From the NCBI GenBank assembly GCA_965235115.1, contig OZ249436.1, positions 41,602,001 to 41,666,000 on the forward strand: a stretch of 64,000 nt of DNA. The letters are read 5' to 3'. The stretch comes from Laetmonice hystrix (Eukaryota). Shown here one piece after another: positions 48,601 to 64,000 of the stretch. Below the pieces are notes generated by a model. The model did not search any database and was not told where the DNA came from. It worked only from the letters and a program-made list of their open reading frames with translations. Numbering within the stretch: the first letter of the stretch is position 1; each line of letters begins with the position of its first letter. The position numbers and the translations under genes were made by a program.

Positions 48601-51600
48601 GATGCATCCAGGTATGTCCCTTCTTACCCTGCTGGTCATATTCATATTGATGTCTGGATGCTTTGTCTGAAAGGAAAGAGTTGCACAATCTCATAACACC
48701 AGAGCTGTGATTTTTAAGATATTGTATTAATGTATAGTGTTCTGACATTTTCAGAGAGGTGATTGTGACGGTCATGGCAGCGGGATCGTCCTGTGCCGCT
48801 GACAAACATCGTATCCTGCCGTCCTCACCCAACAATATCGTTACATCTGGAGTAAAGAAAAGTAAAGAGGTGAACGAGGCTCCAGACTGGGGTCTTATCG
48901 TCGGTAAGTGAACGCCACCTATAGGTGGTAGTGAGCACTGATATTAATGAGGATAGTTACATAGATTTCAGAAGGGGGTGGGAAGGGGCTAGTTTTTCTC
49001 AAGCTAAATGAGTTTTACTTCACATGGCTTGCATTATGAGTCAGAGTTGAGATACATGTACTGCTAGACTCATATATTTCTGTGATTTTGCGAGTGAGTT
49101 TCACAATCATTGATGCATCAAAAAGTCATCAAAATGCTCATGACGTCTAAATAGGTTCATCAGGACAGAAGATGGGCAGATAGCATGGGAAATACTTGAC
49201 CATGGTCTCCACAGTAGGTTCCCACTGGTCACTGATATAGGTGTGTTTCTATGACCTTTGTTCTGACTGACAGGTATGCTGGCGTCCCTGGCAGCCTGTG
49301 TCGTCATGCTGGTGGTGGCTGTCATTGTATGGAGACCACGGGATGCGGGTATTTACCCCATGAAACATTGGAAACCCAAGTACCGGAGTCTGGGGGCACC
49401 CCCGCCGGTACCCAGCTACATGCTACATGACGAGGATCACTGGCCCACCAAGTGAGTCATGGATCAGTCATTGATTAGTCACGGTCAAGGTTAAATAATA
49501 TAGAAGTAATATAGAAAAGAGCGAAAGAGTAAAACTAAAACCCCATGTAGTACTGGTTTTGTGGTGTGTTCTAGGGATGGAGAAGGTCTTGGGCCGAGAC
49601 TGTTGGGTGATGGTGCAGAGTCTGAGACTGGAATACTGGCAGTGAATGCAGAGGGTAACCTGGAAGATTTCAACGTGCGCGTACTGTTTGATAAACTGGA
49701 GGACCAGAACCTCCATCTGGCCTCGCAGCTGGCTCGCCATAACGAAGACCTCCAGGTGAGTTTGTGGGTGATAACCAAATGTTGAATTCCGAAAGGATCT
49801 TTATTATTGTACTGTGATAAATGATTGCGTTACTCATCATGACTGTACCTAATACATGTAGTCAGTTTACGATGACATCTTAATTCACAGGCCTTCTATG
49901 ATCGCATCAACGGCCAAAACGACGAGCTCAAGAAGATGCTGAATGATCTTGACCTTTCGAAGCTCGAGGAGATCGAGCGGCAACGGCATGAGGGAGGTGC
50001 CGGTCACGAGCAGGGTCATGTAGAGGGCGCTGCAGGTGGTGATGGCGTCAACATCGTTAACACAACAGTTAACATTGGCAGTGACGTCAATAGACAGTTT
50101 AAGTTCACAGGTGTGACACTTCCTTCGTTCGGCATCAATGTCGTACATCTTTTCTATCGGTTGAGTTCCGTTACCGAGTTTTAAATGTTGTGGCAGTAGA
50201 AACTTGTTTACCTTGGACTTATTTTGTGGGAATGGATGGTGATATATTTCAGTTCAGCAACAATAATCAATCTGGCTGTCATAGCTGGTTACTTTAATGC
50301 AGGAGCTTATCTTGACTTGACTGTGTTCTTTTAATCGTGGCAGGAGGAAATGGTCGTGAGGCAGAACTGATGCTAGCAGTTCAACAGTTGCTTGACAAAC
50401 TGAACTCTGGTCACATCCCAATATCTCCAGACATGCTCAGTGGTGACATGAAGAACATGTCGAGACCTGCCGAAGGCATACGTGTAGGTAACATTAGTTT
50501 GTCTAGGCAGCAGGAAAAGCCAGATGGGTAGAATATCAGCAAGTGAGAAATATGAATCAATGAGTTTTTTGTTCAAGGTAGAACCCCGTCGGAAGTTCAG
50601 TACGTGTACATAGAAAAATGTGTCCGACATGCCGTTTATAATTGTATCTATGCACCCCTAACCTTCAGATACAAGGCAAGGGCCTGGGGCGGAACCAGAA
50701 TTCAGAGCGACTTGCAACAGAACGAGAACTCGCAGCAGGCGAAAGAAATGCTTTAGATTCCCTATTGGCAGAAGATGAACTAAAACGAAACGAAATTATC
50801 CAGGATATGAGTGACAAACTAGCTGCAAAACTCCAGGGTGAGTGAGATGGTGAAAAAAGTAGCAAGTAACAAGTACGACCTGAATAATTGATCAAGGAGA
50901 TTTTCATGTAAATGTTTAACAGACCAAATGAAATAGAAAACACATGCAAGAGGAGCTTAGACCTCTGAAGATGTGTCTCTTGCAGGTGACCTTAGTGCAG
51001 AAGAGGTAGCCAGGATCATGGATGCCCACAGCAAGGATCTTCAGGAAGCCTTGGAACGTCATGACAAAGGTCGCAGCCGTCAAGCCGAAGCCCTGAGACA
51101 GAAACTGGCCGAGAGGCGGCGTAAGAAAGAGCAGGAACTTCTTGACAAGCACACAGAGGAGGTAAAGACTCCTTTTGGTTTATTTTTTATGAAAGGATTA
51201 AAATTCACATTCAGAATCAGCTAAAGTTTTCCCGTTAAAAGAAACAAGGGTTACCATTTCATTCAAGCGTCATGCTTTCAAAAACACTTCAAACTTGTTT
51301 TGTGAAACACAGGCCAAGAAGAAAGGACTTCCACCACCACCTGTCCCAGTTGACAACTCTGATGATCGAGTTGAGTCTGAGGAACACCTTCTCAAGTTAA
51401 TCCGCAGTCAAGAGAATGCGGGAGCAATCAAAGCTGATACGGACACTTCTCGCAAGATGGCAGAGGAAGAGATCAATCAGATCTCTGATCAACTCAAAGA
51501 ACAAATAGTAAGGATAATGACATTCTGTAGTAGTAGAATATTATGAACGAATTCTGCAAGTTTTGTTATATATTTTTGACCACCTTCATTTGCTATTTAA

Positions 51601-54600
51601 ACATGCTTGTTTGAGCACCAAGATTTTATTGTATTTTAGGAGAGTCTGCACCAGCAAGGCCTTCTGTCTGAGGAGGAGAGAGATCGTCTCATTAAGGAAC
51701 AGATGGACAGGCAGGTGGAGCTTGAGCAGGCCATGGAAGCTCGTCGCAATGCACAGTTGGCCTCATTCAAACAGCGCATGGCTGACAGAAAGAAGCGGCG
51801 CATAGACACGCTGAATCGGCAGCACGAACAAGACAAGATGGAGGTTTGTAAAAGATCTCTTTTCTATACGAAATGTGTAAAAAGCTGGATGAACGAATAT
51901 TTCATTTTGGATGAATCCTAGCATCAATTGGTAGAAAACGATGACGAGAACGGCTTTCTGTTCTGACAGCTGTCTACGAAGCTCCTACAGGAAGGTCACC
52001 ACGAGGACCTTGACCGAGTCATCGGTGACCTTGAGAGGAAACAGAAGCGGCAGGTTGAGGCAGTGGAGGCTGAGTTGGATGGTGAAGAGGCAGGTCACGT
52101 GAGGAGCATCACACAGGCTGTCGATGAGGAACACGTCAAGGATGTCAAGGAGGCTCACAAGGACATTATCAGCAAGGTCAGGGTTTTCACAATCAGGACT
52201 AGAACAGTAGGGGATTAATTTATAAAATGTGGAAGATATCATCGACATTATAGATACAATGTACAAATATATGGCAGAATTATGATTTGAAAGACATACT
52301 AAGAAAGATTATCCAGACACACTAGAGGAAGTGTTAACAGACCGATGATTTTACTGACAAAAACGTGGGCACTAACTTTTTCATCTCTCACAGATGTCGG
52401 AGGTTAACTCCGGAATTGATGGAGTTCTGCAACAGCGAATCATGGACCAGTATCGTCGTGACTGTGAGGCTGTCAATGAACAACTTGAATCAAGTCGCTT
52501 GAGACAGTTCAACGACCTGCATGTGAGTTAGACATGTTTATAATCGTGGGTCGCTCAAGGTATTGTATCCAACATCCAACATCTGAATATACCAGTACTG
52601 ATGAATGGTTTACATATACTGATGCAACTACTGTTAGTAATCTTTGGTACTCTGTGGCATCCACAGGCCAAGTTGTCAGCCCGTAAGGCTCGCCGGCTTG
52701 CTGACAGCCAGCGGCAATCTGAGGAAGAGGCAGCAGCACGCTTCCTTGCAGAACAAGAACAACAGATGAAGACGGTCATCGCTCAGAAAGACATCGGTGA
52801 TGATCTCTTCAAGGCACCACTGGTCACATACGGCGAGTCGGTAGAGGAGCAGGCCCTTAAAAAAGAACAGGTATATGGAAATTTTACTGGGGGTTGTCAT
52901 AAAGCAGTGCATCTTTCACATGGCAGGAAAAAAAAACAATATAAAGTAACATCTAAGTTGTCGCAGCAATGTAAATAATAACTAATTGGTTTTCCAGGAG
53001 CGTGCTAAGGAAGAGATCCGTAAGCGTCACAAGGTGGAGCACAAGTCTGTGGCCCAGAAGTTGGAAAGTGATGCCCATAAGGAAGAGGAGGTGCTGATTG
53101 CCAGCTCAGACCAGCAGAGAGAGCAGGCTCTGAGGGAGAAGAAAAATAAACAGGCGGCAGAGCTTGCAGCTCGCAAAGATCTCAGCCAAGAGGAGCTTGC
53201 AGCAGTGAGTCAATTGGAGTAGTTTACGTTAGAGAAGGTTGTACTAGATATGCAAACATGCACCTCATTCTGAAAATGTTAGAACTTATTGTGTCGATCA
53301 ACTAGAAATATGTGCTAATGATGTCGGCATTTTCTAAAAGGATGCCAGAGGCTGACTGTAATATGTACCCCGGTAATGGCCAACATTGTGGATTTGATCG
53401 TCTGTTTAAACCAATGATTGATTTTGTTTGCAGCTAATGGCTGCCCATGAACATGAGCTTCAATTGATGGCTGAAAAGATGGATGCTGACCGACAGCGAC
53501 AAATGGTGACACTCCGTGATAGAATGGCGCAGCGTCGCCGCCGTCGCATGGAAGCTTTGCGACGCAAGCAGGACGTTGAGTTAACTAAGGAGAGTCTGAC
53601 TCAGAAGAAGGAACTGGATGAAATCAAAACTGTTAAGGTGAGTGTGGTCACTACTGCAGAGGTCAATCACATTTTGGAATGCCGTCTGTGCAGTATTAAT
53701 GAGGTTAACGGATTTTCATCCACAGGCACGGGAGGTGGAGCAGCAGGCCATGGAGGAAGGAGTGAAGGAGAATGGTCTGGAGGAGAGTGACAAGGTCATC
53801 AGGGCTGTACAGGCTGAGCGACATGCCCAGGAGCTGAGGGACCTTGACAAACAGTTTACGGCCGAGAAGAAGATTGTGGTGGATGATGCTCTCAGTCAGT
53901 TGGCAGAGCGTTATGAAAGTCTTCATAACGATGCTGTCAAACGCCACGAGGCCGAACTGATAGCGCTACAGGTCAGAGAGGTTTTTTCTGTAGACTGTGA
54001 TCGTTCTTAATTTTTTTTGGTCAAATGGAACTTTTTTTTGGCTCCCGAAGGACTAGGAACAGAGAATTTTTATGGGAACTTGTAAAAAAATAGCAAACCT
54101 TATGTGGTGGATACTCCTTTTTGCTAGCCATCAAAATGAAATAAATAATATGCAGTCGATGATCGTTCTTACATCCCACCAACTTATGTAGATGGCTTAT
54201 GTAGATGACTTTTCTACAACCTTAATTGACCTTTCAGAAGAAGAACTTACCAGATGACGAGTACCAGCTGCGTCGATCTCAGCTCCTCAATAAGCAGCAG
54301 CTAGAGCTCGCTGAGCTTGACCAGCGACACAGCACAGAACAGAAGGAGATAGAACGCGGTGCCCTCACTGACTGGGAGATGCGCTATGCCCAGGCTAAAC
54401 TGAACCTCAAGGAAAAACACTACAAGGTCAGTTTTTCTCTTCTTTCACTTCGATTGTTCAGTTCCTGCCTTCAAACATTAAAACTGTTGATGATCAGCAG
54501 TCAATACATCAACATTTATTCAAGGGGACTTGTTTCGAGGTTGTTAGAATTTTGTAGCAGTTTCCCCCTTTTCTTCAGCTCAATACCTTTATTTCTTTGA

Positions 54601-57600
54601 CATTCAGGAGTTTGCCGAGGCCCTGCGAGGGTTCAACCCCCAGCACCAGAGCGTGGCACAGGCAGAGACAGCAGCCATAGAGTTAGAAGGAGTCCGAAAC
54701 AAGCTCGACCAACAGCGCAAGGAACACGTTGAACTTATCCAGAAGGAACAACAGTGTAAGTATTTGACACAAGAATAAATACATTACAATATAAATATTC
54801 ATATGTCCAAACAAGGTTTCAGTGGCTAGATTTTGAAAATTTGTTCTTCCAGCTTTTTACCAGTATTAGAAAATGGAGACGCTGTCAGACATGTTCACAG
54901 TCTTAAAAAGTGATACATGAATCATCTCTGCATTCTGTAAACTGTTTTTTATTTTCATTTTCAGCATTTGAGTCGGAGGAGGCTCGTCGTGCTCAGGCAG
55001 AGATTGAGGCATATAACCTCTCGCTGGAGAAGGAGACTGAGCGAGAACAGGAGCGCCATGCACGCAACATTGAAGCTCTCAACCAGCGCAAGGAGCAGCT
55101 GGTGCAAGACAAGAAAGACAAACTCAAGGTAGGATTCTCACTTTAATATGGTTACAGTTAGTTAGAGATCATCAGGTGGACGACAACGCTTCTGACAGTA
55201 CAAGAGGAACTATAAGTAAGAGGGCTTTGACAACCTTATAAAATACAACTTTGAAATTTTCATTGAATCATGGATTCCCCAGGCAAGACTTAAATCACTT
55301 TCCTCAAACTGCCTTATGAATTGGTTATTTTGGTGCTGAAATCTTTGTCACCTTGTCCCATACCGCGTGGTAAAGTTAGTGAGTTTGTGGCCAGGTGGAG
55401 CTGCAGAAAATGCAGCAGGCAGGGTCCTCCAAGGAAGAACAGGACCAGATCATGGCTGCCCACCAGCGTGACCTCCAAAACCTTGTCAACAAGATGGACG
55501 CCGACAAACTGCGCATGCAGAGCTCTCTCCAGGAGCGGCTGCGCAGACGGCGCCAGGAGAAACTCAAACAAAAGGAGGACTCGTTGAGTAAGGTCACGGA
55601 GGAGGGCAAGAGAGAGCTGGCTGAGAAACAACGCAGTGAGACAGATCGACTCATGGCTAACCAGGTAGGGTGACAAATTCAGGCAGCAGGTTGATGCAAG
55701 ATCTTTTTTCCACCCAATGAACACATTGATCACTGTTGAAGAAGGCTTAATTGAAGCTATAAGGATCATTAATATTTAGCATAATTTTGTACAATTCAAC
55801 CATTGCTTTCAGCAGTCGCCACCCATTTCCTGTTGCAGAAGTTGTTGCATTATTGAACCAAACTAAAGTGGCGTTTCCATGTGTACGTTTCCATAATTTG
55901 TTTCCATTATCTGTTTCCGTTTCATGGTTCCATTTTGAGGAATCGTCCACTGGGCTCATTTCCATGTCAGCTTCCGTTTCTCCTCAAACAGTGATAATTT
56001 CCCATTAGCATACCGTTTCCAGCATATGTTTAAGCAAATTCTATGGCATTTATAAGCCTATGTTTTGTAGCTTTTTGTCTCGTATCCAAATTTAAATAAA
56101 AGTATTAAAACATCAAGGTGCATCTTTACCGATGCTGTTGGTCTCTCAGTCTCACAAGGATAATGAGAATATTTACTTTCTGATGGTCTAATTATTGGCC
56201 GGTTTGGCGTAAGTCTGTTCCGGTCATGTCCCCACCTCCCTGACAGCATTCATGAGGCCAGTTCATAATAAAATTAACATCACAAGGCCTCTTGCACATC
56301 AAATGTGTTCCCTTTTCACCTAGCGGACATCTGTGGTACTACATTTTGCTCTCCGGGTTGCCATCCGTCTTCGTTTTGATCACTCCCCATTAAGATCGAG
56401 AAACAGAAAACGGAAAGTGAAAACGGAGTCGGACTGCGAAACGTACACATAGAAATGCGCCCGAGCCATGGGAAATAGGCATAAATGATCAAATTGGAAA
56501 CAGATAACAGAAATGGATAATGGAAACGGATAACGGAAATATGCACACGGAAAGGCCACTTAATTTACTTAATTTACTGTGTCAGGTACTGGCGTTAAGA
56601 GAGAGCATCAACATTGACCACATGGTGGCTCCACCGGTTCCGCCAAAAGTAACGCCACAGGTCGCAGAGCAAAGCTCGGCAGTTCCTGGCTCAGCCACTA
56701 CTGCGCCACCTGGTGGGACTGGCCAGGAAGGAGCCATGCCGACGTCATACCAGATGGCAGCACCACTCAATGATGCCGAGTTAACGGCGTTACTGATGGC
56801 GTCTCCACTGTACCAGAAACTGGAAAAAATCAAGAAGTCTGTGAGTGGAGCTGGCAAGTTGAGGCGCAAGGCTGCCCCGGGTAAGAACAGCTCAGAGATC
56901 ATAGTCGGATTACATAAAAATGTTTCTATCAGACAATAACATAGAGAGGAACTCCTGGTGAAACGACTATCCAGAATTAAGCACATGATATATGATTGAT
57001 GTTAGTATTAGTTTATCTGTGATTTATAATGTGATGTAGTGTTAGTTCTCTGTGATCTCAATACGCCTAAAATTAATCCATGAATTATTTTCACTTTTGA
57101 CTTTCTACCTCAACCTGTAATATAAAACATGGTGTACATATGTTGGATGATGTCATCACAGGACCCCGCTTTCATGACGGCTCCCAGCCGAGTAGGTAAT
57201 CCTGTATAAAGATGCTCAATAAAAAATTAAAAAAAAGAAGATGTGTTTAGGAGGAAAGCATAGGATAGCATCTGTATTGTTATGAAACAGGTCAGCTATA
57301 CTATAACAGGGTGAGTAAAAAAAAACGATACACTCACCCTTTTTTGACTCACCCTGTAGTATATCTAAACCGTCACTCATTTCATAAAAGGAAGAATTAG
57401 GGGACCCATAATGGTGTTTCAAGAAATAAAGCAAACCACACTGAAAGCCTGTTCTTGTTTCCTTGTACTATACAGGGGATAGTTACATAGACCTACAAGA
57501 TGCAGAATGGACCATTGATGACGAACTGGAACCAGTGGATTTGAACAAGTTACCTGGACGCACATTTGTCGTTTACAAGTTTGGCTGTTTCGTTGTGGAC

Positions 57601-59674
57601 CTTCTTGCTGCACACTGCCAGCATAAACCAGTCACATTGCTCCTTGCGGAAAAGATTCCAGCCAATAAGCAGCTCTCTAACAATGCTTATCGTAACTCGT
57701 TTTACTATGACGCAAACAATTCTATTCTGTACCTGCGTGTTGCTCGACTGGACTGTGTGGGTCAGTTTGTACTGGTTCTTGTGCACACATTGGCCCACAT
57801 CAAGGCTGGTAAGTGAACACAAAATGTTCACCCATTTTAAACCATTTAAGCCAAGAATCTTGGATTACTCTCAATCAGTGAAGTTTGATGTAGGTTTGAA
57901 ATCTTGGATTACTCTCTATCAGTGAAGTCTGATGTAGGTTTGAAAGAAATTGTAACTAAGTCAATGAGTCGATCATTACATGAATCCAATCAAACAATAT
58001 AACATTCTGTCCCAACTCAATAGGTGATCTCGAAGACGACCACAGCCCTGAGTTTGCACTACAGTTCTACCGTGCCCTATCAGTCGTTTGTGACGATCTG
58101 TTCTTCGCCCGCTACCGCCAAGAGTCGTCCCCAGCTGAGACTCTGTCCAAATCGTCTGGAGTTGATGTGAAGGAGGCAGCCTCTGGCCTGCTGGCCGCCA
58201 TGTTTGGCAACACGTACAATGAGGAGGAAAGGTCGCAGGTGGTGGATGACCTCCTGGAGACGCGCATTCTTCCCGGCACAGATGGGAACGGTGTCTCCTT
58301 TAGCAAAGACAAGATAAAAGAGAGGTACATTGTCTATCATATGACATTATGTTAGAATTTGAAAGAATTTATTTTTTCTGTTTTTATATTTTAAGTTCTC
58401 ATTTACTTTGATTAGTTTAAACATGGATGTAAACGTGTGTTCTAGGTTGGACAAGTACACACGTTATTCGGTGAGTCACAAGCTACAGAACTGTCTTGGT
58501 GATGTGGAGGAGAAAATCAGGGTGGCCAAGGGAACAGGATCAAAGATGTTGGCCTCACAACGACTCAAAGAGTTGCTGCCGGAATCAACTCTAGGTATGA
58601 GCCAACTCGATTCTTATCGTATATCTAAATTCTAAAGAGCCTGGTCCATTAAGGCGATTTTCATTGTGACGTCCATGCGATTTTGACATCACTGTTTTAT
58701 TTTTACTTTTTGGATTAAAGAACCCATTTCCTGAAACGGGGAAGGCCAGCCAGGAAAGATTTCAGATTGAAATTCCACCATTAAATCAAAAATCGCATTT
58801 CTTGAGAGTTGAACTATTCCTAGATTAAACCCACTGTGGGTCTGTGGTACTAGGAGACATGAGAGTTTTCTGCAGATCTAGGCTACATATTTCAAAGGAT
58901 TTCCAACAGAAGTATCAATCATGGTATTGGTTATTTTCCTACAGGTAGCTCACTGGCGACTCAGCCTGCTCAGGTTCTTCCGGAAAGCCGCATTCTAGCT
59001 AACATGACTGGTCATGCTCTCTGGCAAACATTCACTAACCAAGAATCTGGGACAAAAGCTGATACGGATTCGGCCAAGACACCAAGAAAGCGAGGACCAC
59101 CTCATGAGGAACTGCTAAAGGTGAGTGTGTTCTTCTCCAACGTCCATGTTTCAAAAGCAAATATTTTCTGAAGATCTTGAATGGTAGTGCGTCGGACTAC
59201 CTCAATTAATTATGCAGGAGTTTCTTTTATGAAACATCGTAAAAAAACATGTCACTGATACTCAAATTCCTCTATCTTCTTTTCCAGTCAAAGGTCGAGG
59301 ATCTTGAAAATCGCCTGGACGAACTTTACGCTGACTTCTCAGAACAGAGCCGGAGTATCATAGATGTCACCGAACAGATTGATGGTACAGCAGAAGAGGT
59401 TGCCATGGAAACAGAGCTCGCCAACAATACGCCAGGTGTGGAAGCTGGGAAACACGTGACCAGCCTGAAGGAATCGACGGCACGTCTCAGAGAGCTCCGG
59501 TCAAAACTAGCCAGACTGGAGTGTCAGAAATCTACGACCTCAGACAAATTAGAGAAGTGCCAACAAGAACTGGAGACTACACGACAACAGAAATATGAAG
59601 TGTTGGAAGAGGGGGTTCGCCAACCTAAAGAAAAGGTCACCCCCACTAAATCTGTTAAAGGAAAGAAGAAGTGA
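210..59674 (+). CDS. Giant multi-exon gene (5' end outside window): >=9,592-aa type I membrane protein with Cys-rich ephrin-receptor-like (GCC2/GCC3) repeats, single TM helix and long coiled-coil cytoplasmic tail
   Basis: Exons traced by AG/GT (one GC) boundaries that keep the Cys-repeat frame: 210-351,574-775,934-1049,1348-1611,2077-2165,2481-2594,2759-2842,2978-3205,3469-3631,3929-4047,4330-4515,4736-4980,5170-5390,5772-5892,6010-7649,7799-7940,8195-9918,10380-10571,10966-11100,11484-11750,11995-12351,12626-12805,13233-13349,13689-13841,14118-14270,14440-14655,14938-16113,16286-16540,16804-17037,17240-17427,17670-17836,18079-18323,18516-19451,19693-20983,21251-21864,22054-22395,22650-23171,23570-23690,23827-24041,24223-24456,24882-25133,26130-26264,26546-26869,27114-27281,27410-27520,27716-27901,28110-28325,28522-28803,29082-29288,29429-29695,29986-30273,30414-30683,30872-31081,31605-31904,32120-32275,32393-32575,32911-33072,33290-33499,34243-34422,34598-34870,36267-36401,36658-36882,37133-37429,37691-37813,37953-38118,38309-38484,38727-38918,39036-39257,40727-40980,41190-41410,41795-42015,42331-42474,42621-42788,42961-43287,43469-43577,43757-44031,44238-44393,44674-45685,45912-46062,46491-46629,47718-47917,48457-48611,48755-48903,49274-49451,49575-49755,49891-50110,50344-50483,50669-50837,50986-51161,51313-51507,51640-51843,51970-52176,52394-52522,52667-52870,52998-53204,53434-53637,53726-53971,54238-54426,54608-54755,54965-55128,55395-55664,56586-56880,57476-57808,58024-58324,58446-58594,58945-59120,59288-59674 (TGA). 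Sum 28,779 nt = 9,593 codons including the stop, starting in phase 0. A possible extra 51-nt exon at 46842-46892 is not counted. Confidence 0.9.
1099..1274. mobile_element. MITE-like foldback element with ~55-bp inverted arms (intron 3)
   Basis: taaactcgtttgaattcggtttccgcgtcggactgcagcgatggcccagtcgc ... gcgattgggccatcgctgcggtccgacgcggaaaccgaattcaatagagttta. Left flank is TTAA|AG; a CT|TTAA lies ~20 bp past the right arm, so the TSD is ambiguous. Confidence 0.75.
6010..7649 (+). CDS. Large internal exon 15 of the giant gene (Cys-rich repeats)
   Basis: Acceptor tttttcag|c at 6008-6009, donor gaag|gtaaaa at 7650; matches ORF 6074..7753. Confidence 0.92.
8195..9918 (+). CDS. Large internal exon 17 of the giant gene (Cys-rich repeats)
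   Basis: Acceptor ttctag|t, donor acag|gtgaga; matches ORF 8133..9968. Confidence 0.92.
11124..11307. mobile_element. Tc1/mariner (pogo/Tigger-like) MITE
   Basis: TA|CAGTCAGACCTCGCTTATCCGGA ... TAATGAGGTCTGACTC|TA; TA TSD on both sides. Confidence 0.75.
12626..40980 (+). CDS. Ectodomain block 2: ~700-aa super-repeat region of GCC2/GCC3-like Cys repeats (6 full periods, 7 marker copies)
   Basis: Three independent rare sub-motifs recur every ~2.1 kb of spliced CDS (see findings). N-x-S/T sequons are abundant (NQTG, NYTG, NVTG, NSTG). Confidence 0.85.
12928..13079. mobile_element. Palindromic MITE with CAG target-site duplication (PIF/Harbinger-like)
   Basis: ~70-bp inverted arms (gagccggttttactaaag...agtgaatgg / ccattcact...ctttagtaaaaccggccc) around a ~10-nt loop; CAG at 12925-12927 and 13080-13082. 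Confidence 0.8.
14938..16113 (+). CDS. Large internal exon 27 of the giant gene
   Basis: Acceptor gttacag|ct, donor actg|gtgcgt; matches ORF 15009..16184. Confidence 0.9.
18516..19451 (+). CDS. Large internal exon 33 of the giant gene
   Basis: Acceptor cttcag|gt, donor acag|gtacgt; matches ORF 18476..19459. Confidence 0.9.
19693..20983 (+). CDS. Large internal exon 34 of the giant gene
   Basis: Acceptor cccacag|ga, donor aatgg|gttggt; matches ORF 19644..21056. Confidence 0.9.
23261..23431. mobile_element. MITE with CAG TSD (PIF/Harbinger-like)
   Basis: CAG|GGGTGCGTTCCAC ... GTGGAACACACCC|CAG; repeated aaagacgtcttt subterminal motifs. Confidence 0.8.
23440..23479 (+). repeat. 40-nt copy (39/40 identical) of the intron41/exon42 junction at 26117-26156
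   Basis: gtgttccctgtaggtgactgcagtgctagcttctactgct vs gtgttccctgtaggtgactgcagtgctggcttctactgct. Confidence 0.9.
25182..25859. mobile_element. Non-autonomous Tc2-like (TcMar) DNA transposon
   Basis: TA|CCGTAATCTTCCGTGTACAAGCCGC left end; GCAGCTTATACACGGAAGAGTAC right end (last bases diverged); internal direct repeat ggccatgtataagccgcaccc near both ends. Confidence 0.7.
31162..31336. mobile_element. MITE with CAGTGGCGTACCCAGA TIR (hAT-like ends) and 5-bp GTAAC duplication
   Basis: GTAAC|CAGTGGCGTACCCAGA ... TCTGGGTACACCACTG|GTAAC. Confidence 0.8.
33727..34262 (+). repeat. 62-63-bp minisatellite, 8 copies plus the real intron58/exon59 junction
   Basis: Unit tattctgtgcccaggataatgtctgccatgtacactttctgggtcagata(a/g)tttgtcact(t)tg. 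AG ends at 33740, 33802, 33865, 33927, 33990, 34053, 34116, 34179; the functional AG ends at 34242. Confidence 0.97.
39350..39660. repeat. Possible interspersed repeat fragment in intron 68
   Basis: Contains atgaaatttggcaca and gcagccatttt motifs typical of invertebrate non-autonomous elements; no TIR or TSD resolved. Confidence 0.3.
40981..41189 (+). other. Non-canonical GC-AG intron
   Basis: Exon 69 ends CAT ATG|GCAAGT and exon 70 starts in phase 0 (GTT GAC CTA). The nearby GT alternatives are phase 1 and break the frame. Confidence 0.75.
44674..45685 (+). CDS. Exon 78: last Cys repeats, then a distinct Cys-rich linker (CECIGKYRAFQTSDGACRCLSGY...)
   Basis: Acceptor ctccag|gt, donor gaag|gtatag; matches ORF 44652..45845. 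Confidence 0.9.
46842..46892 (+). CDS. Candidate 51-nt symmetric (phase 1-1) extra exon, VEDATFAIVNGKSHSLP
   Basis: Acceptor gtgtcttgcag, open frame in phase with exon 80, donor ccag|gtacca (weak). Confidence 0.5.
47979..48350. mobile_element. CMC/EnSpm-like non-autonomous element with 2-bp CT TSD and duplicated right half
   Basis: CT|CCCAGATAGCACACAG ... CTGTGTGCTATCTGGA|CT; internal ~50-bp inverted arms; a second right end (TGTGTGCTATCTTG) finishes at 48191. Confidence 0.75.
48888..49332 (+). CDS. Single transmembrane helix (split over exons 83/84): WGLIVGMLASLAACVVMLVVAVIVW
   Basis: 25 uncharged, mostly hydrophobic residues followed directly by basic RPRDAGIYPMKHWKPKYR (positive-inside rule). 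Confidence 0.85.
49575..55664 (+). CDS. Cytoplasmic coiled-coil region (exons 85-101), E/K/R/Q-rich with repeated MxAHxxxL...MDAD...LxxRxxxRRR modules
   Basis: [27 protein letters not shown], then charged helical exons; ten consecutive phase-0 introns. Confidence 0.85.
55867..56560. mobile_element. Non-autonomous DNA transposon with TAA TSD (PIF/Harbinger-like) and TTTCC/GGAAA subterminal arrays
   Basis: TAA|AGTGGCGTTTCCATGTG ... CACACGGAAAGGCCACT|TAA; tttcc(a/g)t repeats at the left end and (c/t)ggaaa repeats at the right end. Confidence 0.75.
57307..57356. mobile_element. Tiny internally deleted Tc1/mariner remnant
   Basis: CAGGGTGAGTAAAAAA ... TTTTTGACTCACCCTG|TA; only the right TA is intact. 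Confidence 0.5.
57476..58324 (+). CDS. Cytoplasmic globular alpha/beta domain with zincin-like HTLAH...DHSPEF motif (exons 103-104)
   Basis: Translation ...NSFYYDANNSILYLRVARLDCVGQFVLVLVHTLAHIKAG|DLEDDHSPEFALQFY...; the exon calls are firm, the fold call is inference. Confidence 0.7.
57856..57943 (+). repeat. Two-copy 44-bp tandem duplication in intron 103
   Basis: aatcttggattactctc(a/t)atcagtgaagt(t/c)tgatgtaggtttga x2. Confidence 0.9.
59288..59674 (+). CDS. Terminal coding exon of the giant gene (coiled coil, ends ...KSVKGKKK*)
   Basis: Acceptor tttccag|tca; open to TGA at 59672-59674 (ORF 59249..59674). Confidence 0.9.
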   Translation, partial: SKVEDLENRLDELYADFSEQSRSIIDVTEQIDGTAEEVAMETELANNTPGVEAGKHVTSLKESTARLRELRSKLARLECQKSTTSDKLEKCQQELETTRQQKYEVLEEGVRQPKEKVTPTKSVKGKKK

Positions 59675-62645: not shown

Positions 62646-64000
62646 TTAGAATGCTGTGTAGTTGGGGTTGCCCATGTTGCCTGCTCCGCCCATCCCACTG
62701 CCACCGAAGTTACCGCCGCCCATGCCACCGCCCATGTTGTTGCCAGATCCATAACCACCGCCAAAGTTGCCTGTTGAAAAAAAAGGACATTTGTCATCAG
62801 GAGTTTGACATGCACATAATTATGTTCCCTTCGTCCTTCCCTGTTTATAAGAACTTTCCAAGTAGAACGTAAATATTATGCTCTCACTCTTCCATGGCCT
62901 AAGTTCACTACTGTTATTTTCTTTATTTCGGAAATTTCTTGCAATTCTTATACATTACATGTTATTGGTACTCAATTTTGTTAAAATCTAACTTTACTTG
63001 CAAAGATTCAAACAAATATTCTAAAATTGAAAGAAAAAAAGAAAACTAGGAACAACCTATGAAATTTAAAGAGGAAATAAACATTTGCTTACACTCATCG
63101 AATCCACCTCCGCCACTTCCAAAGCCACCACTGTTCATGTTGCCATTACCAAACCCACTGTTTCCACCGCCAAAACTGGAATTGAAACCATCCCCACCCT
63201 GGTTGCGGGCCATGCCCCCACCAAAGCTTCCCGTTCCCCCACTGCGCCCTGCTGGTGTTGACCTCAGGAAGAGCTCAATGTACCGGTGCTCTGTAAAAAC
63301 AAGAATGCATTTAATAAGTTACAATATTAAATCTGTCGGGTAATTCTAAGCATCCAGTTGTAATATTATGTGATATAAATGTATTATTAGGCCGGCCATT
63401 AAAATCCGCCTTGTTCTAGATTATTTTTAGACGAGTGCATCATAATAACGTGATAACTTACTCATGCTTGCTCTGTCTTTTGTCATTGCAGATTGTGCCT
63501 CATCATGTGTTGTGAAGTCTACATCTGCTTCACCGGAAGCTCGGCCGTCGTTGTTGTAATGGATAACCACATTCACTGGGTTCAGAGGTTTGAAGAACTG
63601 TTGACAAACACATGAACATATTATTTGAAGAGTTCTACCAAACAATGCAAAGCATATTTCTCACACAACAGCACATTTACAAACATGATCCAGAAGATTA
63701 TTTTTAATCTCTTCAGTCTTCAGACTCACTTTCATCAGGATATTTAAGTTCATACCCTGTCCAATTGTTATGGGGCCGATGTTGCCTACAAAAAAATTCC
63801 ATCTTTTACAAAAACAACTTACATCAAGGATATCTTGTTCTGTTGCTGCAAAGGGTAATCCTCGCATGTGGATGCAGTGTCCAGTTTGGCTGTCATAATT
63901 AGTCATGGCCTCATTGCCTCGTCCCATGCCACCACCGTACCGGTTGCGGCTACCATCTCCCATGCCTCCACCAAATCCACCGCCCATGTTGCTACCTCCA
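62646..64000 (-). CDS. HNRNPH: hnRNP F/H family gene (GRSF1/glorund-like), 3' part: Gly-rich linker, qRRM3 and Gly/Asn-rich tail
   Basis: Exons 64000-63823, 63597-63462, 63290-63093, 62770-62646 (TAA), all GT-AG and frame-consistent. Protein [76 protein letters not shown] closely matches the third qRRM of hnRNP H/F. Ends [14 protein letters not shown]. Confidence 0.93.

What the first reader, a model, noticed from the sequence alone, without database searches (positions are those of the whole stretch)
57476..58324. Cytoplasmic zincin-like domain with the catalytic Glu replaced (HTLAH-x9-HSPEF)
Seen: FVLVLVHTLAHIKAGDLEDDHSPEFALQFY, with His at 57784, 57796 and 58041, preceded by beta-strand-like NSFYYDANNSILYLRVARL. 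Established: minigluzincin-type metalloproteases (WLM/Wss1, SprT, YgjP/DUF45) use HExxH, then a third His a few residues later in an HxxxF motif. Inference: all three potential Zn ligands are kept but Glu is replaced by Thr. That would make a Zn-binding pseudoprotease as the intracellular effector of a giant receptor, a combination I do not recognise.
Basis: inference. Interest (0 to 1): 0.72.

Follow-up and report, generated by a model that had tools for sequence, protein, structure and literature searches.

The report
Glutamate-less zincin domain in giant receptor tail
The inner tail of a giant membrane protein ends in a domain shaped like a zinc protease; it keeps a likely metal site but has never had the catalytic glutamate, and it marks an unstudied protein family found from protists to vertebrates.

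Summary
Exons 57476-57808 and 58024-58324 splice (GT/AG) to give HTLAH-x9-H, with His codons at 57784, 57796 and 58041.

The zincin reading is supported at fold level. An AlphaFold2 model of the closest full homologue (pLDDT about 98 over the core) matches Wss1 best (Z 9.2). Minigluzincins, YbeY-type proteins and SPRTN follow, and about 25 of the top 27 solved matches are zincins. Pfam, PDB sequence and PHROG searches find nothing.

Two points need correcting.
- The missing Glu is not a local loss. In 120 aligned relatives the residue after the first His is Cys, Ala, Thr or Ser, and never Glu.
- The third His is clade-specific. The 3 nearest orthologues have it, but most of the family and this genome's own paralogue do not. 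The conserved third polar residue is Asp116, nine residues after the second His. It is kept or lost together with both His (110 all kept, 9 where a His and Asp116 are both lost, 1 mixed).

The layout of ectodomain, one membrane helix, a 1,200-2,400-residue coiled-coil tail and then this domain recurs in Percolomonas, Fabomonas, Chromosphaera, a crinoid and vertebrates (fish si:dkey-103g5.4). All are uncharacterised.

I read it as a metal-binding cleft that does not cut peptides in the usual way. Metal binding is untested. Note s1-319918 covers this gene's ectodomain.

The parts
57476..57808 (+). Exon holding domain residues 1-110 and the first base of codon G111: the N-terminal YIDxxDAxW motif, helix A, a three-stranded sheet and the HTLAH helix.
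   Evidence: The model of the homologue has pLDDT about 98 over this part.
57809..58023 (+). Intron of 215 nt (GT...AG) that splits codon G111.
   Evidence: The intron position is conserved in orthologous loci L004-L006. Five allelic differences lie in it.
58024..58324 (+). Exon holding domain residues 111-210: the DD(H) loop, the long helix after the site, and then a less conserved linker with two shorter helices.
   Evidence: The conserved core ends near residue 145.
57484..57510 (+). N-terminal acidic motif YIDLQDAEW. D5 and D8 are nearly invariant in the family.
57682..57699 (+). NAYRNS loop (family consensus NAF-RNS) just before the second strand. It is lost together with the His/Asp triad in a divergent subgroup.
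57784..57798 (+). HTLAH, the HxxxH on the site helix. H103 is kept in 116/120 and H107 in 113/120. Thr sits where zincins have the catalytic Glu.
58038..58043 (+). D116 and H117. Asp116 (110/120) is the candidate third metal ligand, 9 residues after H107. His117 is conserved only in the nearest orthologues.
49276..49332 (+). Single transmembrane helix MLASLAACVVMLVVAVIVW followed by RPRD...KHWKPKYR. It puts everything downstream in the cytoplasm.
   Evidence: Orientation is inferred from the Cys-rich, sequon-rich N-terminal side and the basic residues after the helix.
49657..49707 (+). Conserved motif NLEDFNVRVLFDKLEDQ a little after the membrane helix. It is the second family-wide conserved element of the tail.
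50640..56885 (+). Exons of the charged, coiled-coil-like tail between the membrane and the domain. No Pfam family matches.
59290..59674 (+). Approximate last coding exon (its start was not mapped), coiled-coil-like, with stop TGA at 59672-59674. The domain therefore lies within a few hundred residues of the C-terminus.

Best explanation
The two exons encode the core of a zincin-fold domain. A helix and a three-stranded sheet are followed by a helix carrying HxxxH, a short loop carrying Asp-Asp(-His), and a long closing helix. By comparison with the crinoid orthologue, the domain sits about 1,200 residues behind the single membrane helix. It lies near the C-terminus of a giant single-pass membrane protein with a Cys-rich ectodomain.

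The domain defines an unannotated family of membrane proteins found from Discoba, ancyromonads and ichthyosporeans to vertebrates. The family keeps both His of HxxxH, an Asp nine residues later and an NAF-RNS loop next to them. It has never had the Glu that activates water in zincin proteases.

I therefore read it as a cleft that still binds a metal but cannot carry out the canonical Glu-assisted peptide hydrolysis. Most likely it holds a ligand, plausibly an extended peptide laid on the edge strand as in a substrate-trapping protease mutant, at the far end of the coiled-coil tail.

Shown here: the splice, the fold class, the family, the absence of Glu, and the joint keeping or loss of His, His and Asp. 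Inferred: metal binding, ligand docking and cytoplasmic location.
For: Fold. The AlphaFold2 model of P0002:302-507 (73% identical to exon 103) has mean pLDDT 86.6 and about 98 over residues 10-140.
- VIA-align against 48,161 PDB representatives gives Wss1 5xbn Z 9.2 (rmsd 3.0 A, 108 of 128 residues), abylysin 7.8, S. pombe Wss1 7.8, the YbeY-type AQ_1354 7.3 and SPRTN 6.3. The catalytic domains of M1 aminopeptidases score about 6. About 25 of the top 27 rows are zincins.
- Foldseek's top PDB rows are selecase, jannalysin, abylysin, IrrE, BlaR1, Wss1 and ZMPSTE24, with weak E-values of 8e-3 to 0.5.
- The ESM Atlas shape search lists YgjP, SprT, WLM and M48 clusters. The language-model search lists SprT-like, WLM and ImmA/IrrE clusters.

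Site.
- H103 is kept in 116/120, H107 in 113/120 and D116 in 110/120.
- His-His and Asp are both intact in 110 sequences, both lost in 9, His-His only in 1, and Asp only in 0.
- The group that lost them also lost NAF-RNS but kept the core residues Y33, G36, A57, P61, L84, G95 and F121.
- In the model, single bridge residues at 73 (beside the NAF loop) and 120 (beside Asp116) suggest the two loops touch.
- Asp as the third zinc ligand 6 to 10 residues after HEXXH is documented for Asp-zincins (PMC3890501).
- No Glu, Asp or Gln occurs after the first His in 120 sequences.

Selection. 5 of 6 exon variants are synonymous.

Context. The same order of ectodomain, membrane helix, long tail and domain is seen in a 3,985-aa crinoid protein collinear with the window. 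It also occurs in proteins of 4,700-7,500 aa from Percolomonas, Fabomonas and Chromosphaera.
Against: No sequence method links the domain to any zincin family (Pfam, PDB phmmer and profile, PHROGs), so homology rests on fold and motif position.

Foldseek E-values against the PDB are weak, and Z 9.2 is only just above the range the tool calls common.

The model is of a homologue, not of the window's own spliced protein.

A subgroup that includes a frog giant receptor (P0118, HAVAQ) has lost the site yet keeps the domain, so part of the function does not need the site.

Four conserved Arg (R72, R87, R90, R140) would also suit a phosphate-bearing ligand rather than a peptide.

The YbeY family shows that a related fold without Glu can be an active enzyme.
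Confidence: 0.5

Rival explanations
1. It is an active metal-dependent hydrolase with a non-canonical mechanism, acting for instance on a phosphodiester, an RNA or a modified peptide. Water would be activated by the metal and another residue, as in YbeY, which has a related fold and an H3xH5xH site without Glu.
For: YbeY-type proteins are among the best structural matches: AQ_1354 Z 7.3, E. coli YbeY 6.4 and S. aureus YbeY 6.4. YbeY is a metal-dependent RNase whose site is a His motif without Glu (PMC4047096). The family has about 12 nearly invariant polar residues, including four Arg and three Asp. That is more typical of a catalytic site than of a simple docking surface. The triad has been kept over the whole span of eukaryotes.
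Against: The spacing (H-x3-H-x8-D) differs from YbeY (H-x3-H-x5-H). No sequence similarity to UPF0054 is detectable. No conserved acidic or His residue could be placed beside the metal as a general base. The residue after the first His varies among C, A, T, S, I and V, which argues against a role in chemistry. One lineage dispenses with the whole site.
Confidence: 0.2
2. It is a purely structural or scaffolding domain. The His-His-Asp site holds a structural metal, or only hydrogen bonds, that stabilise the fold. The function is protein-protein assembly through other surfaces, for example pairing of two tails brought together by the coiled coil.
For: The domain and its hydrophobic core persist in members that have lost the triad and the NAF-RNS loop (P0049, P0094, P0105, P0125, P0131, P0147 and frog P0118). 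The tail has no other globular domain. The other family-wide conserved element, after the membrane helix, is only a short motif leading into coiled coil.
Against: Joint conservation of at least 8 polar residues on adjacent loops in 110 of 120 sequences is stronger than usually seen for a structural metal site. A structural site would not need the edge-strand NAF-RNS motif to be lost together with it.
Confidence: 0.2
3. The resemblance to zincins is convergent or an artefact of the prediction, and HxxxH is an unrelated motif on a helix.
For: There is no sequence-level link to any zincin family. Foldseek E-values are weak. The tool warns that Z under 8 is common, and only one match exceeds it.
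Against: Four searches by different methods and libraries all list zincins at or near the top. In the AlphaFold DB libraries they come only after uncharacterised proteins. HxxxH lies on the helix that follows the sheet, as in zincins. An Asp follows at a distance documented for Asp-zincins. The model is very confident.
Confidence: 0.05

Closest known systems
WLM/Wss1 and SprT/SPRTN DNA-protein-crosslink proteases (compact zincins)
   Same: They give the best structural match: S. cerevisiae Wss1 Z 9.2 over 108 of 128 residues, S. pombe Wss1 7.8 and SPRTN 6.3. They share the small size, the order of helix, three-stranded sheet and site helix, and a third ligand expected in the loop just after the site helix.
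   Different: These families have HExxH with a third His a few residues later (established knowledge) and are soluble nuclear proteases. Here there is no Glu in any member, Asp comes at +9, Pfam WLM and SprT-like do not match, and the domain sits at the end of a membrane protein's coiled-coil tail.
Minigluzincins (selecase, projannalysin, proabylysin) and mini-zincins such as Acel_2062 and TTHA0227
   Same: They are the top Foldseek rows. VIA Z is 6.2-7.8 for the minigluzincins and 4.5-4.7 for Acel_2062 and TTHA0227. They share the minimal zincin scaffold. In TTHA0227 the ligands are His95, His99 and Asp109, an Asp 10 residues after the second His (PMC3890501). That is close to the +9 spacing seen here.
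   Different: Those are prokaryotic, free-standing proteins of about 110 aa with HEXXH. This domain is eukaryotic, lacks Glu, has an extra N-terminal segment and an NAF-RNS loop, and is embedded in a protein of thousands of residues.
YbeY (UPF0054) metallo-endoribonuclease
   Same: It has a zincin-like fold with a His-based metal site and no Glu after the first His (H3xH5xH; PMC4047096). Structural Z is 6.4-7.3. It shows that a Glu-less site can be catalytic.
   Different: The ligand spacing and third ligand differ, there is no sequence similarity, and YbeY is a small soluble protein that binds ribosomes and RNA.
C-terminal domain of Mycoplasma pneumoniae MPN_634/MPN_635 and of bacterial or phage 'ATP-binding proteins' (Pfam MPN635_N, some with HATPase_c_3)
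   Same: After the family's own members, these are the closest predicted-structure matches. Swiss-Prot AFDB gives E 2.3e-5 and 1.6e-4. AFDB clusters give E 5e-7 to 1e-5. The Atlas gives TM 0.49-0.50 over about 125 residues.
   Different: They are uncharacterised, prokaryotic or viral, and attached to ATPase-type modules rather than to membrane proteins. I could not fetch their sequences to see whether they carry HExxH. No sequence-level link was found.

Membership tests
Zincin-fold metallopeptidases (MEROPS clan MA in the wide sense) | A mixed sheet followed by an 'active-site helix' and a C-terminal helical part, with the cleft between them. | tested here: met
   Model secondary structure. 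Zincins dominate the PDB, Atlas and, after two uncharacterised proteins, Swiss-Prot searches. The best match is Wss1, Z 9.2, rmsd 3.0 A over 108 residues.
Zincin-fold metallopeptidases (MEROPS clan MA in the wide sense) | An HEXXH motif whose Glu acts as the general base (definition in PMC3890501). | tested here: not met
   The window has HTLAH. In 120 relatives the position is C, A, T, S, I, V or G, and never E, D or Q.
Zincin-fold metallopeptidases (MEROPS clan MA in the wide sense) | A third metal ligand (His, Glu or Asp) C-terminal to the motif. | tested here: inconclusive
   Asp116 at +9 is kept in 110/120 and is kept or lost together with both His. His117 occurs only in the nearest clade. 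An acidic residue at 135 is kept in 85 of the 110 site-intact relatives. Geometry could not be measured.
Zincin-fold metallopeptidases (MEROPS clan MA in the wide sense) | Bound zinc and peptidase activity. | not testable with these tools
   This needs purified protein.
WLM (PF08325), SprT-like (PF10263), YgjP/DUF45 (PF01863) | A match to the family profile. | tested here: not met
   No Pfam match for either exon, for six full homologues, or for 74 domain sequences even at E up to 10. PF01863 finds nothing in the whole genome.
   The family consensus is H-[CA]-L-[AS]-H-I-x3-[DE]-[LM]-x-[DN]-D-x-[ND]-P-x-F. His follows the Asp only in about a fifth of members.
YbeY / UPF0054 | An H-x3-H-x5-H metal site (PMC4047096). 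| tested here: not met
   The spacing here is H-x3-H-x8-D(-H). Only fold similarity is seen, Z 6.4-7.3.
Ephrin_rec_like / GCC2-GCC3 type Cys-rich repeats (ectodomain of the same gene) | A match to PF07699 above its cut-off. | tested here: inconclusive
   The best score is 23.0 bits against a cut-off of 23.1 in window:44652-45758. Two other weak TNFR-like and NCD3G hits were seen.

The most novel reading that the evidence does not exclude
The domain would be the signature of an ancient family, present before the main eukaryotic groups split, of giant single-pass membrane proteins. Their only globular cytoplasmic part would be a Glu-less zincin with a live His-His-Asp metal site. That site would be either a new kind of metal-dependent enzyme or a metal-gated docking site linking very long, ruler-like ectodomains to the cell interior through a coiled-coil tail 1,200-2,400 residues long. 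Vertebrates keep a site-intact version (si:dkey-103g5.4 type) that could be tested genetically.
Probability: 0.3. Interest if true: 0.8.

Novelty: new variant of a known kind. Interest (0 to 1): 0.62.

Why it matters
The family has hundreds of members (366 clusters at 50% identity). It includes proteins of 4,000-10,000 residues in protists and invertebrates, and fish, amphibian, reptile and bird genes. No member has a name, a Pfam domain or a paper that I could find.

A recognisable fold and a defined candidate site (H103, H107, D116 and the NAF-RNS loop) give the family its first testable handle:
- measure metal content;
- mutate the site;
- search for partners;
- knock out the zebrafish gene.

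The family also offers a natural series for studying how protease folds are reused for other jobs. It runs from site-intact members, through this clade with an extra His, to a lineage in which the site has decayed.

Tried and rejected
Searches that found nothing useful:
- Sequence searches of each exon peptide and of the family profile against Pfam, the PDB and PHROGs found nothing meaningful. The only PDB rows were HORMA proteins at E 0.9, taken as chance.
- tblastn against phage records gave one chance row at E 5.
- A word-indexed search with the family profile returned only close eukaryotic fragments and no prokaryotic link.
- I tried to reach the bacterial MPN_635-type relatives through the genome search, but PF25856 is not in that library. 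The control genomes give no handles. So whether those relatives carry HExxH is unknown.
- No paper mentions dkey-103g5.4. MPN635 appears once, in an unrelated genome-editing paper.

RNA evidence for the splice: no RNA run was on record. The three listed runs are contigs that span the intron without joints, so they are DNA.

Is there a second globular domain in the tail? No. The conserved block that starts at the membrane helix is that helix, a short DLExFN-type motif and then coiled coil. Pfam finds nothing in five tails.

Rejected reading: that Thr104 is a recent inactivation of an active protease. No relative has Glu.

Rejected claim: a conserved three-His site. His117 is clade-specific.

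Not done:
- The window's own spliced protein was not folded, because it has no single reference. I folded the closest homologue instead.
- The second structure job was not used.
Full report
**1. What is in the sequence**

The stretch holds two coding exons of a + strand gene with ordinary GT/AG introns.
- Exon A is 57476-57808 and exon B is 58024-58324.
- The 215-nt intron between them splits codon G111.
- Spliced, they give 210 residues containing ...FVLVLVHTLAHIKAG|DLEDDHSPEFALQFY....

Three lines support the junction.
- Predicted proteins from other animals run through it without a break: P0002, the Saccoglossus protein P0005 and the 3,985-aa Anneissia protein P0014.
- Three orthologous genomic loci (L004-L006, 67-72% identical over exon A) have an intron at the same codon.
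- Of 6 allelic differences seen inside the two exons in public DNA contigs, 5 are synonymous. The sixth, E to K at 58137, lies in the variable linker.

No RNA run was available. The three runs that hold the stretch are DNA-like, with no joints.

**2. The gene around it**

Upstream, the window is filled with exons of Cys-rich repeats. They resemble Ephrin_rec_like only weakly: 23.0 bits against a cut-off of 23.1.

One hydrophobic helix, MLASLAACVVMLVVAVIVW (49276-49332), is followed by basic residues. After it come:
- a conserved motif, NLEDFNVRVLFDKLEDQ (49657-49707);
- many exons of charged, coiled-coil-like sequence with no Pfam match;
- the domain in question;
- a short coiled-coil end, with the stop at 59672-59674.

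The Anneissia protein is collinear with the window through ectodomain, membrane helix, tail and domain. These are therefore parts of one gene.

The cytoplasmic location of the domain is inferred from this topology.

**3. A large family with no name**

The exon-A peptide alone finds 366 protein clusters at E<=1e-3 among 1.84 billion representatives. Those that carry a name are all 'uncharacterized' or unannotated gene or transcript models:
- Saccoglossus and Anneissia;
- fish 'si:dkey-103g5.4';
- turtle, lizard, bird, frog and lungfish LOC genes;
- two Chromosphaera perkinsii proteins of 7,076 and 6,410 aa;
- a Fabomonas tropica protein of 7,499 aa;
- a 4,727-aa protein of Percolomonas cosmopolitus, a heterolobosean (taxid 63605).

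In long members the order is the same: ectodomain, one membrane helix, 1,200-2,400 residues of tail, then the domain near the C-terminus. The ectodomain is huge and Cys-rich in protists and invertebrates, and short in the fish-type vertebrate genes.

The tail is homologous along its length. Its most widely kept parts are the block that starts at the membrane helix and the 300 residues before the domain. That first block is the helix, a short motif and then coiled coil, not a second globular domain.

This genome has a second gene with the domain (G000 contig 29, L001). It reads HSLAH and TDSNP, and there the first ~130 residues of the domain (to about residue 126, through this motif) lie in one exon.

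I found no paper on the fish gene name.

**4. The fold**

Neither exon, six full homologues, nor 74 domain sequences match any Pfam family. The PDB sequence searches, by single sequence and by profile, are also blank.

I aligned 74 domain sequences (A1) and folded the closest full homologue, P0002:302-507, which is 73% identical to exon A. Mean pLDDT is 86.6 and about 98 over residues 10-140. Model numbering is window domain numbering plus 5. The elements in order are:
- helix 32-52;
- strands 58-64, 80-83 and 88-92;
- a short helix;
- helix 99-115, carrying the two His;
- a loop;
- helix 124-150.

An exhaustive structural comparison with 48,161 PDB representatives ranks the following:
- S. 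cerevisiae Wss1 first (Z 9.2, rmsd 3.0 A, 108 of 128 residues);
- abylysin (7.8) and S. pombe Wss1 (7.8);
- the YbeY-type AQ_1354 (7.3), jannalysin (6.5) and E. coli YbeY (6.4);
- SPRTN (6.3) and selecase (6.2);
- the catalytic domains of M1 aminopeptidases, BepA and HtpX.

About 25 of the first 27 rows are zincins.

Other searches agree.
- Foldseek's top PDB rows are the same minigluzincins, IrrE, BlaR1, Wss1 and ZMPSTE24, although with weak E-values.
- The ESM Atlas shape search lists YgjP, SprT, WLM and M48 clusters.
- A language-model feature search lists SprT-like, WLM and ImmA/IrrE clusters as leads.

Outside the family itself, the nearest predicted structures are the C-terminal parts of M. 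pneumoniae MPN_634 and MPN_635 and of bacterial or phage 'ATP-binding proteins'. They are also uncharacterised, and I could not fetch their sequences.

No sequence method confirms common descent.

**5. The site**

In a 120-sequence alignment:
- H103 is kept in 116 and H107 in 113.
- The residue between them where zincins have Glu is C (48), A (40), T (12) or S (9), with a few I, V or G. It is never Glu, Asp or Gln.

The missing Glu is thus an old, family-wide property, not a lesion of this gene.

That position is mostly S, T, N or A.
- It is T in the closest full homologue, in Saccoglossus and in Anneissia.
- It is S in this genome's paralogue.
- It is conserved in the three nearest orthologous loci that I fetched, which read D-H-N-P.
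- About a fifth of members have a His one or two residues after the Asp.

So it is a clade feature.

The family-wide partner of the two His is Asp116, nine residues after H107, kept in 110 of 120. The three residues go together:
- all intact in 110 sequences;
- at least one His and Asp116 both lost in 9;
- His-His without Asp in 1, a broken model;
- Asp without His-His in none.

These sequences are related to one another, so the counts are not independent events.

The 9 that lost the site also lost the NAF-RNS loop (N69 to S74) but kept the hydrophobic core. They include a frog giant Cys-rich protein, P0118, which reads HAVAQ.

In the model, isolated bridge residues at 73 and 120 suggest that the NAF loop and the Asp loop touch.

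An Asp 6 to 10 residues after the second His is a documented third zinc ligand in Asp-zincins and in TTHA0227, whose ligands are His95, His99 and Asp109 (PMC3890501). An acidic residue at 135 on the next helix, kept in 85 of the 110 site-intact sequences, is a second candidate.

I could not measure distances because coordinates are not returned.

**6. How it most likely works**

The joint conservation of His, His, Asp and the neighbouring loop over the whole span of eukaryotes points to a working site, most simply a bound metal. The constant absence of a general base next to the first His argues against ordinary peptide hydrolysis.

My best reading (0.5) is a metal-holding cleft used to bind a ligand at the distal end of the coiled-coil tail. 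The ligand could be an extended peptide laid against the edge strand. That would resemble Glu-mutant zincins, which from general knowledge still bind substrate.

The rivals are these.
- An active enzyme with another mechanism, as in YbeY, whose H3xH5xH site lacks Glu and cuts RNA (PMC4047096). The four conserved Arg would suit a phosphate-bearing substrate. Confidence 0.2.
- A purely structural domain. This is favoured by the lineage that lost the site but kept the domain. Confidence 0.2.
- A convergent or mispredicted fold. Confidence 0.05.

**7. Novelty and verdict**

The fold class is known, and Glu-less relatives of zincins exist. Three things are new:
- the family itself, which has no Pfam model, no name and no literature that I could find;
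- its fixed H-x3-H-x8-D site without Glu;
- its fixed place at the end of the tail of giant single-pass membrane proteins across eukaryotes.

I rate it a new variant of a known kind, with interest 0.62.

The 'three His kept' and 'Glu replaced' parts need the corrections above. 'Zn-binding pseudoprotease' remains a testable inference.

Noticed in passing
L001:1501-1890 (G000 contig 29, 14711444-14711833): A second gene in this genome carries the domain. It reads HSLAH and TDSNP, with no third His. It resembles the fish si:dkey-103g5.4 type, and the first ~130 residues of the domain, through this motif, lie in one exon there.
   Followed up: partly
window 51027, 53446 and 55461 (+ strand): Three clear copies of a ~32-residue motif occur in separate coiled-coil exons of the tail. 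The motif is H-x2-[DE]-L-Q-x-[LA]-x3-[MH]-D-x2-[KR]-x-R-x4-L-[RQ]-x-[RK]-[LM]-x2-R-R-R. Looser copies seem to exist.
   Followed up: partly
window 49657-49707: The motif NLEDFNVRVLFDKLEDQ, a little after the membrane helix, is conserved from Fabomonas and Percolomonas to vertebrates (alignment A2). It is also kept in members whose zincin-like site has decayed. Its role is unknown.
   Followed up: partly
P0118 (frog, 4,605 aa), P0049, P0094, P0105, P0125, P0131, P0147: This subgroup keeps the domain's core but has lost H107 and/or H103, D116 and the NAF-RNS loop. P0118, P0049, P0131 and P0147 share the window gene's type of sequence just after the membrane helix (PMKxWKPKW/YRSLG), so these four may be its vertebrate counterparts.
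   Followed up: partly
window 58640-58853 and 56928-57248: Intronic stretches where public contigs pile up to word depths of 1,000 to 180,000, against about 56 for the flanks. They are probably high-copy repeats.
   Followed up: no
window 63427-63987 (- strand): ORFs with a Gly-rich segment and ...[19 protein letters not shown]... and ...[17 protein letters not shown]... recall hnRNP F/H-type RRM exons of a neighbouring gene. This is from memory only.
   Followed up: no
P0119 residues about 680-1090 (turtle homologue): The vertebrate tail holds a run of short repeats of the type DPxTG...VP(I/V)xG. Pfam does not recognise them and they were not seen in the window's tail.
   Followed up: no
P0176, P0178, P0187, P0197: Some turtle and bird gene models fuse the family member to ankyrin repeats, and one is named NF-kappa-B inhibitor zeta. 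This suggests the two genes are neighbours in sauropsids.
   Followed up: no
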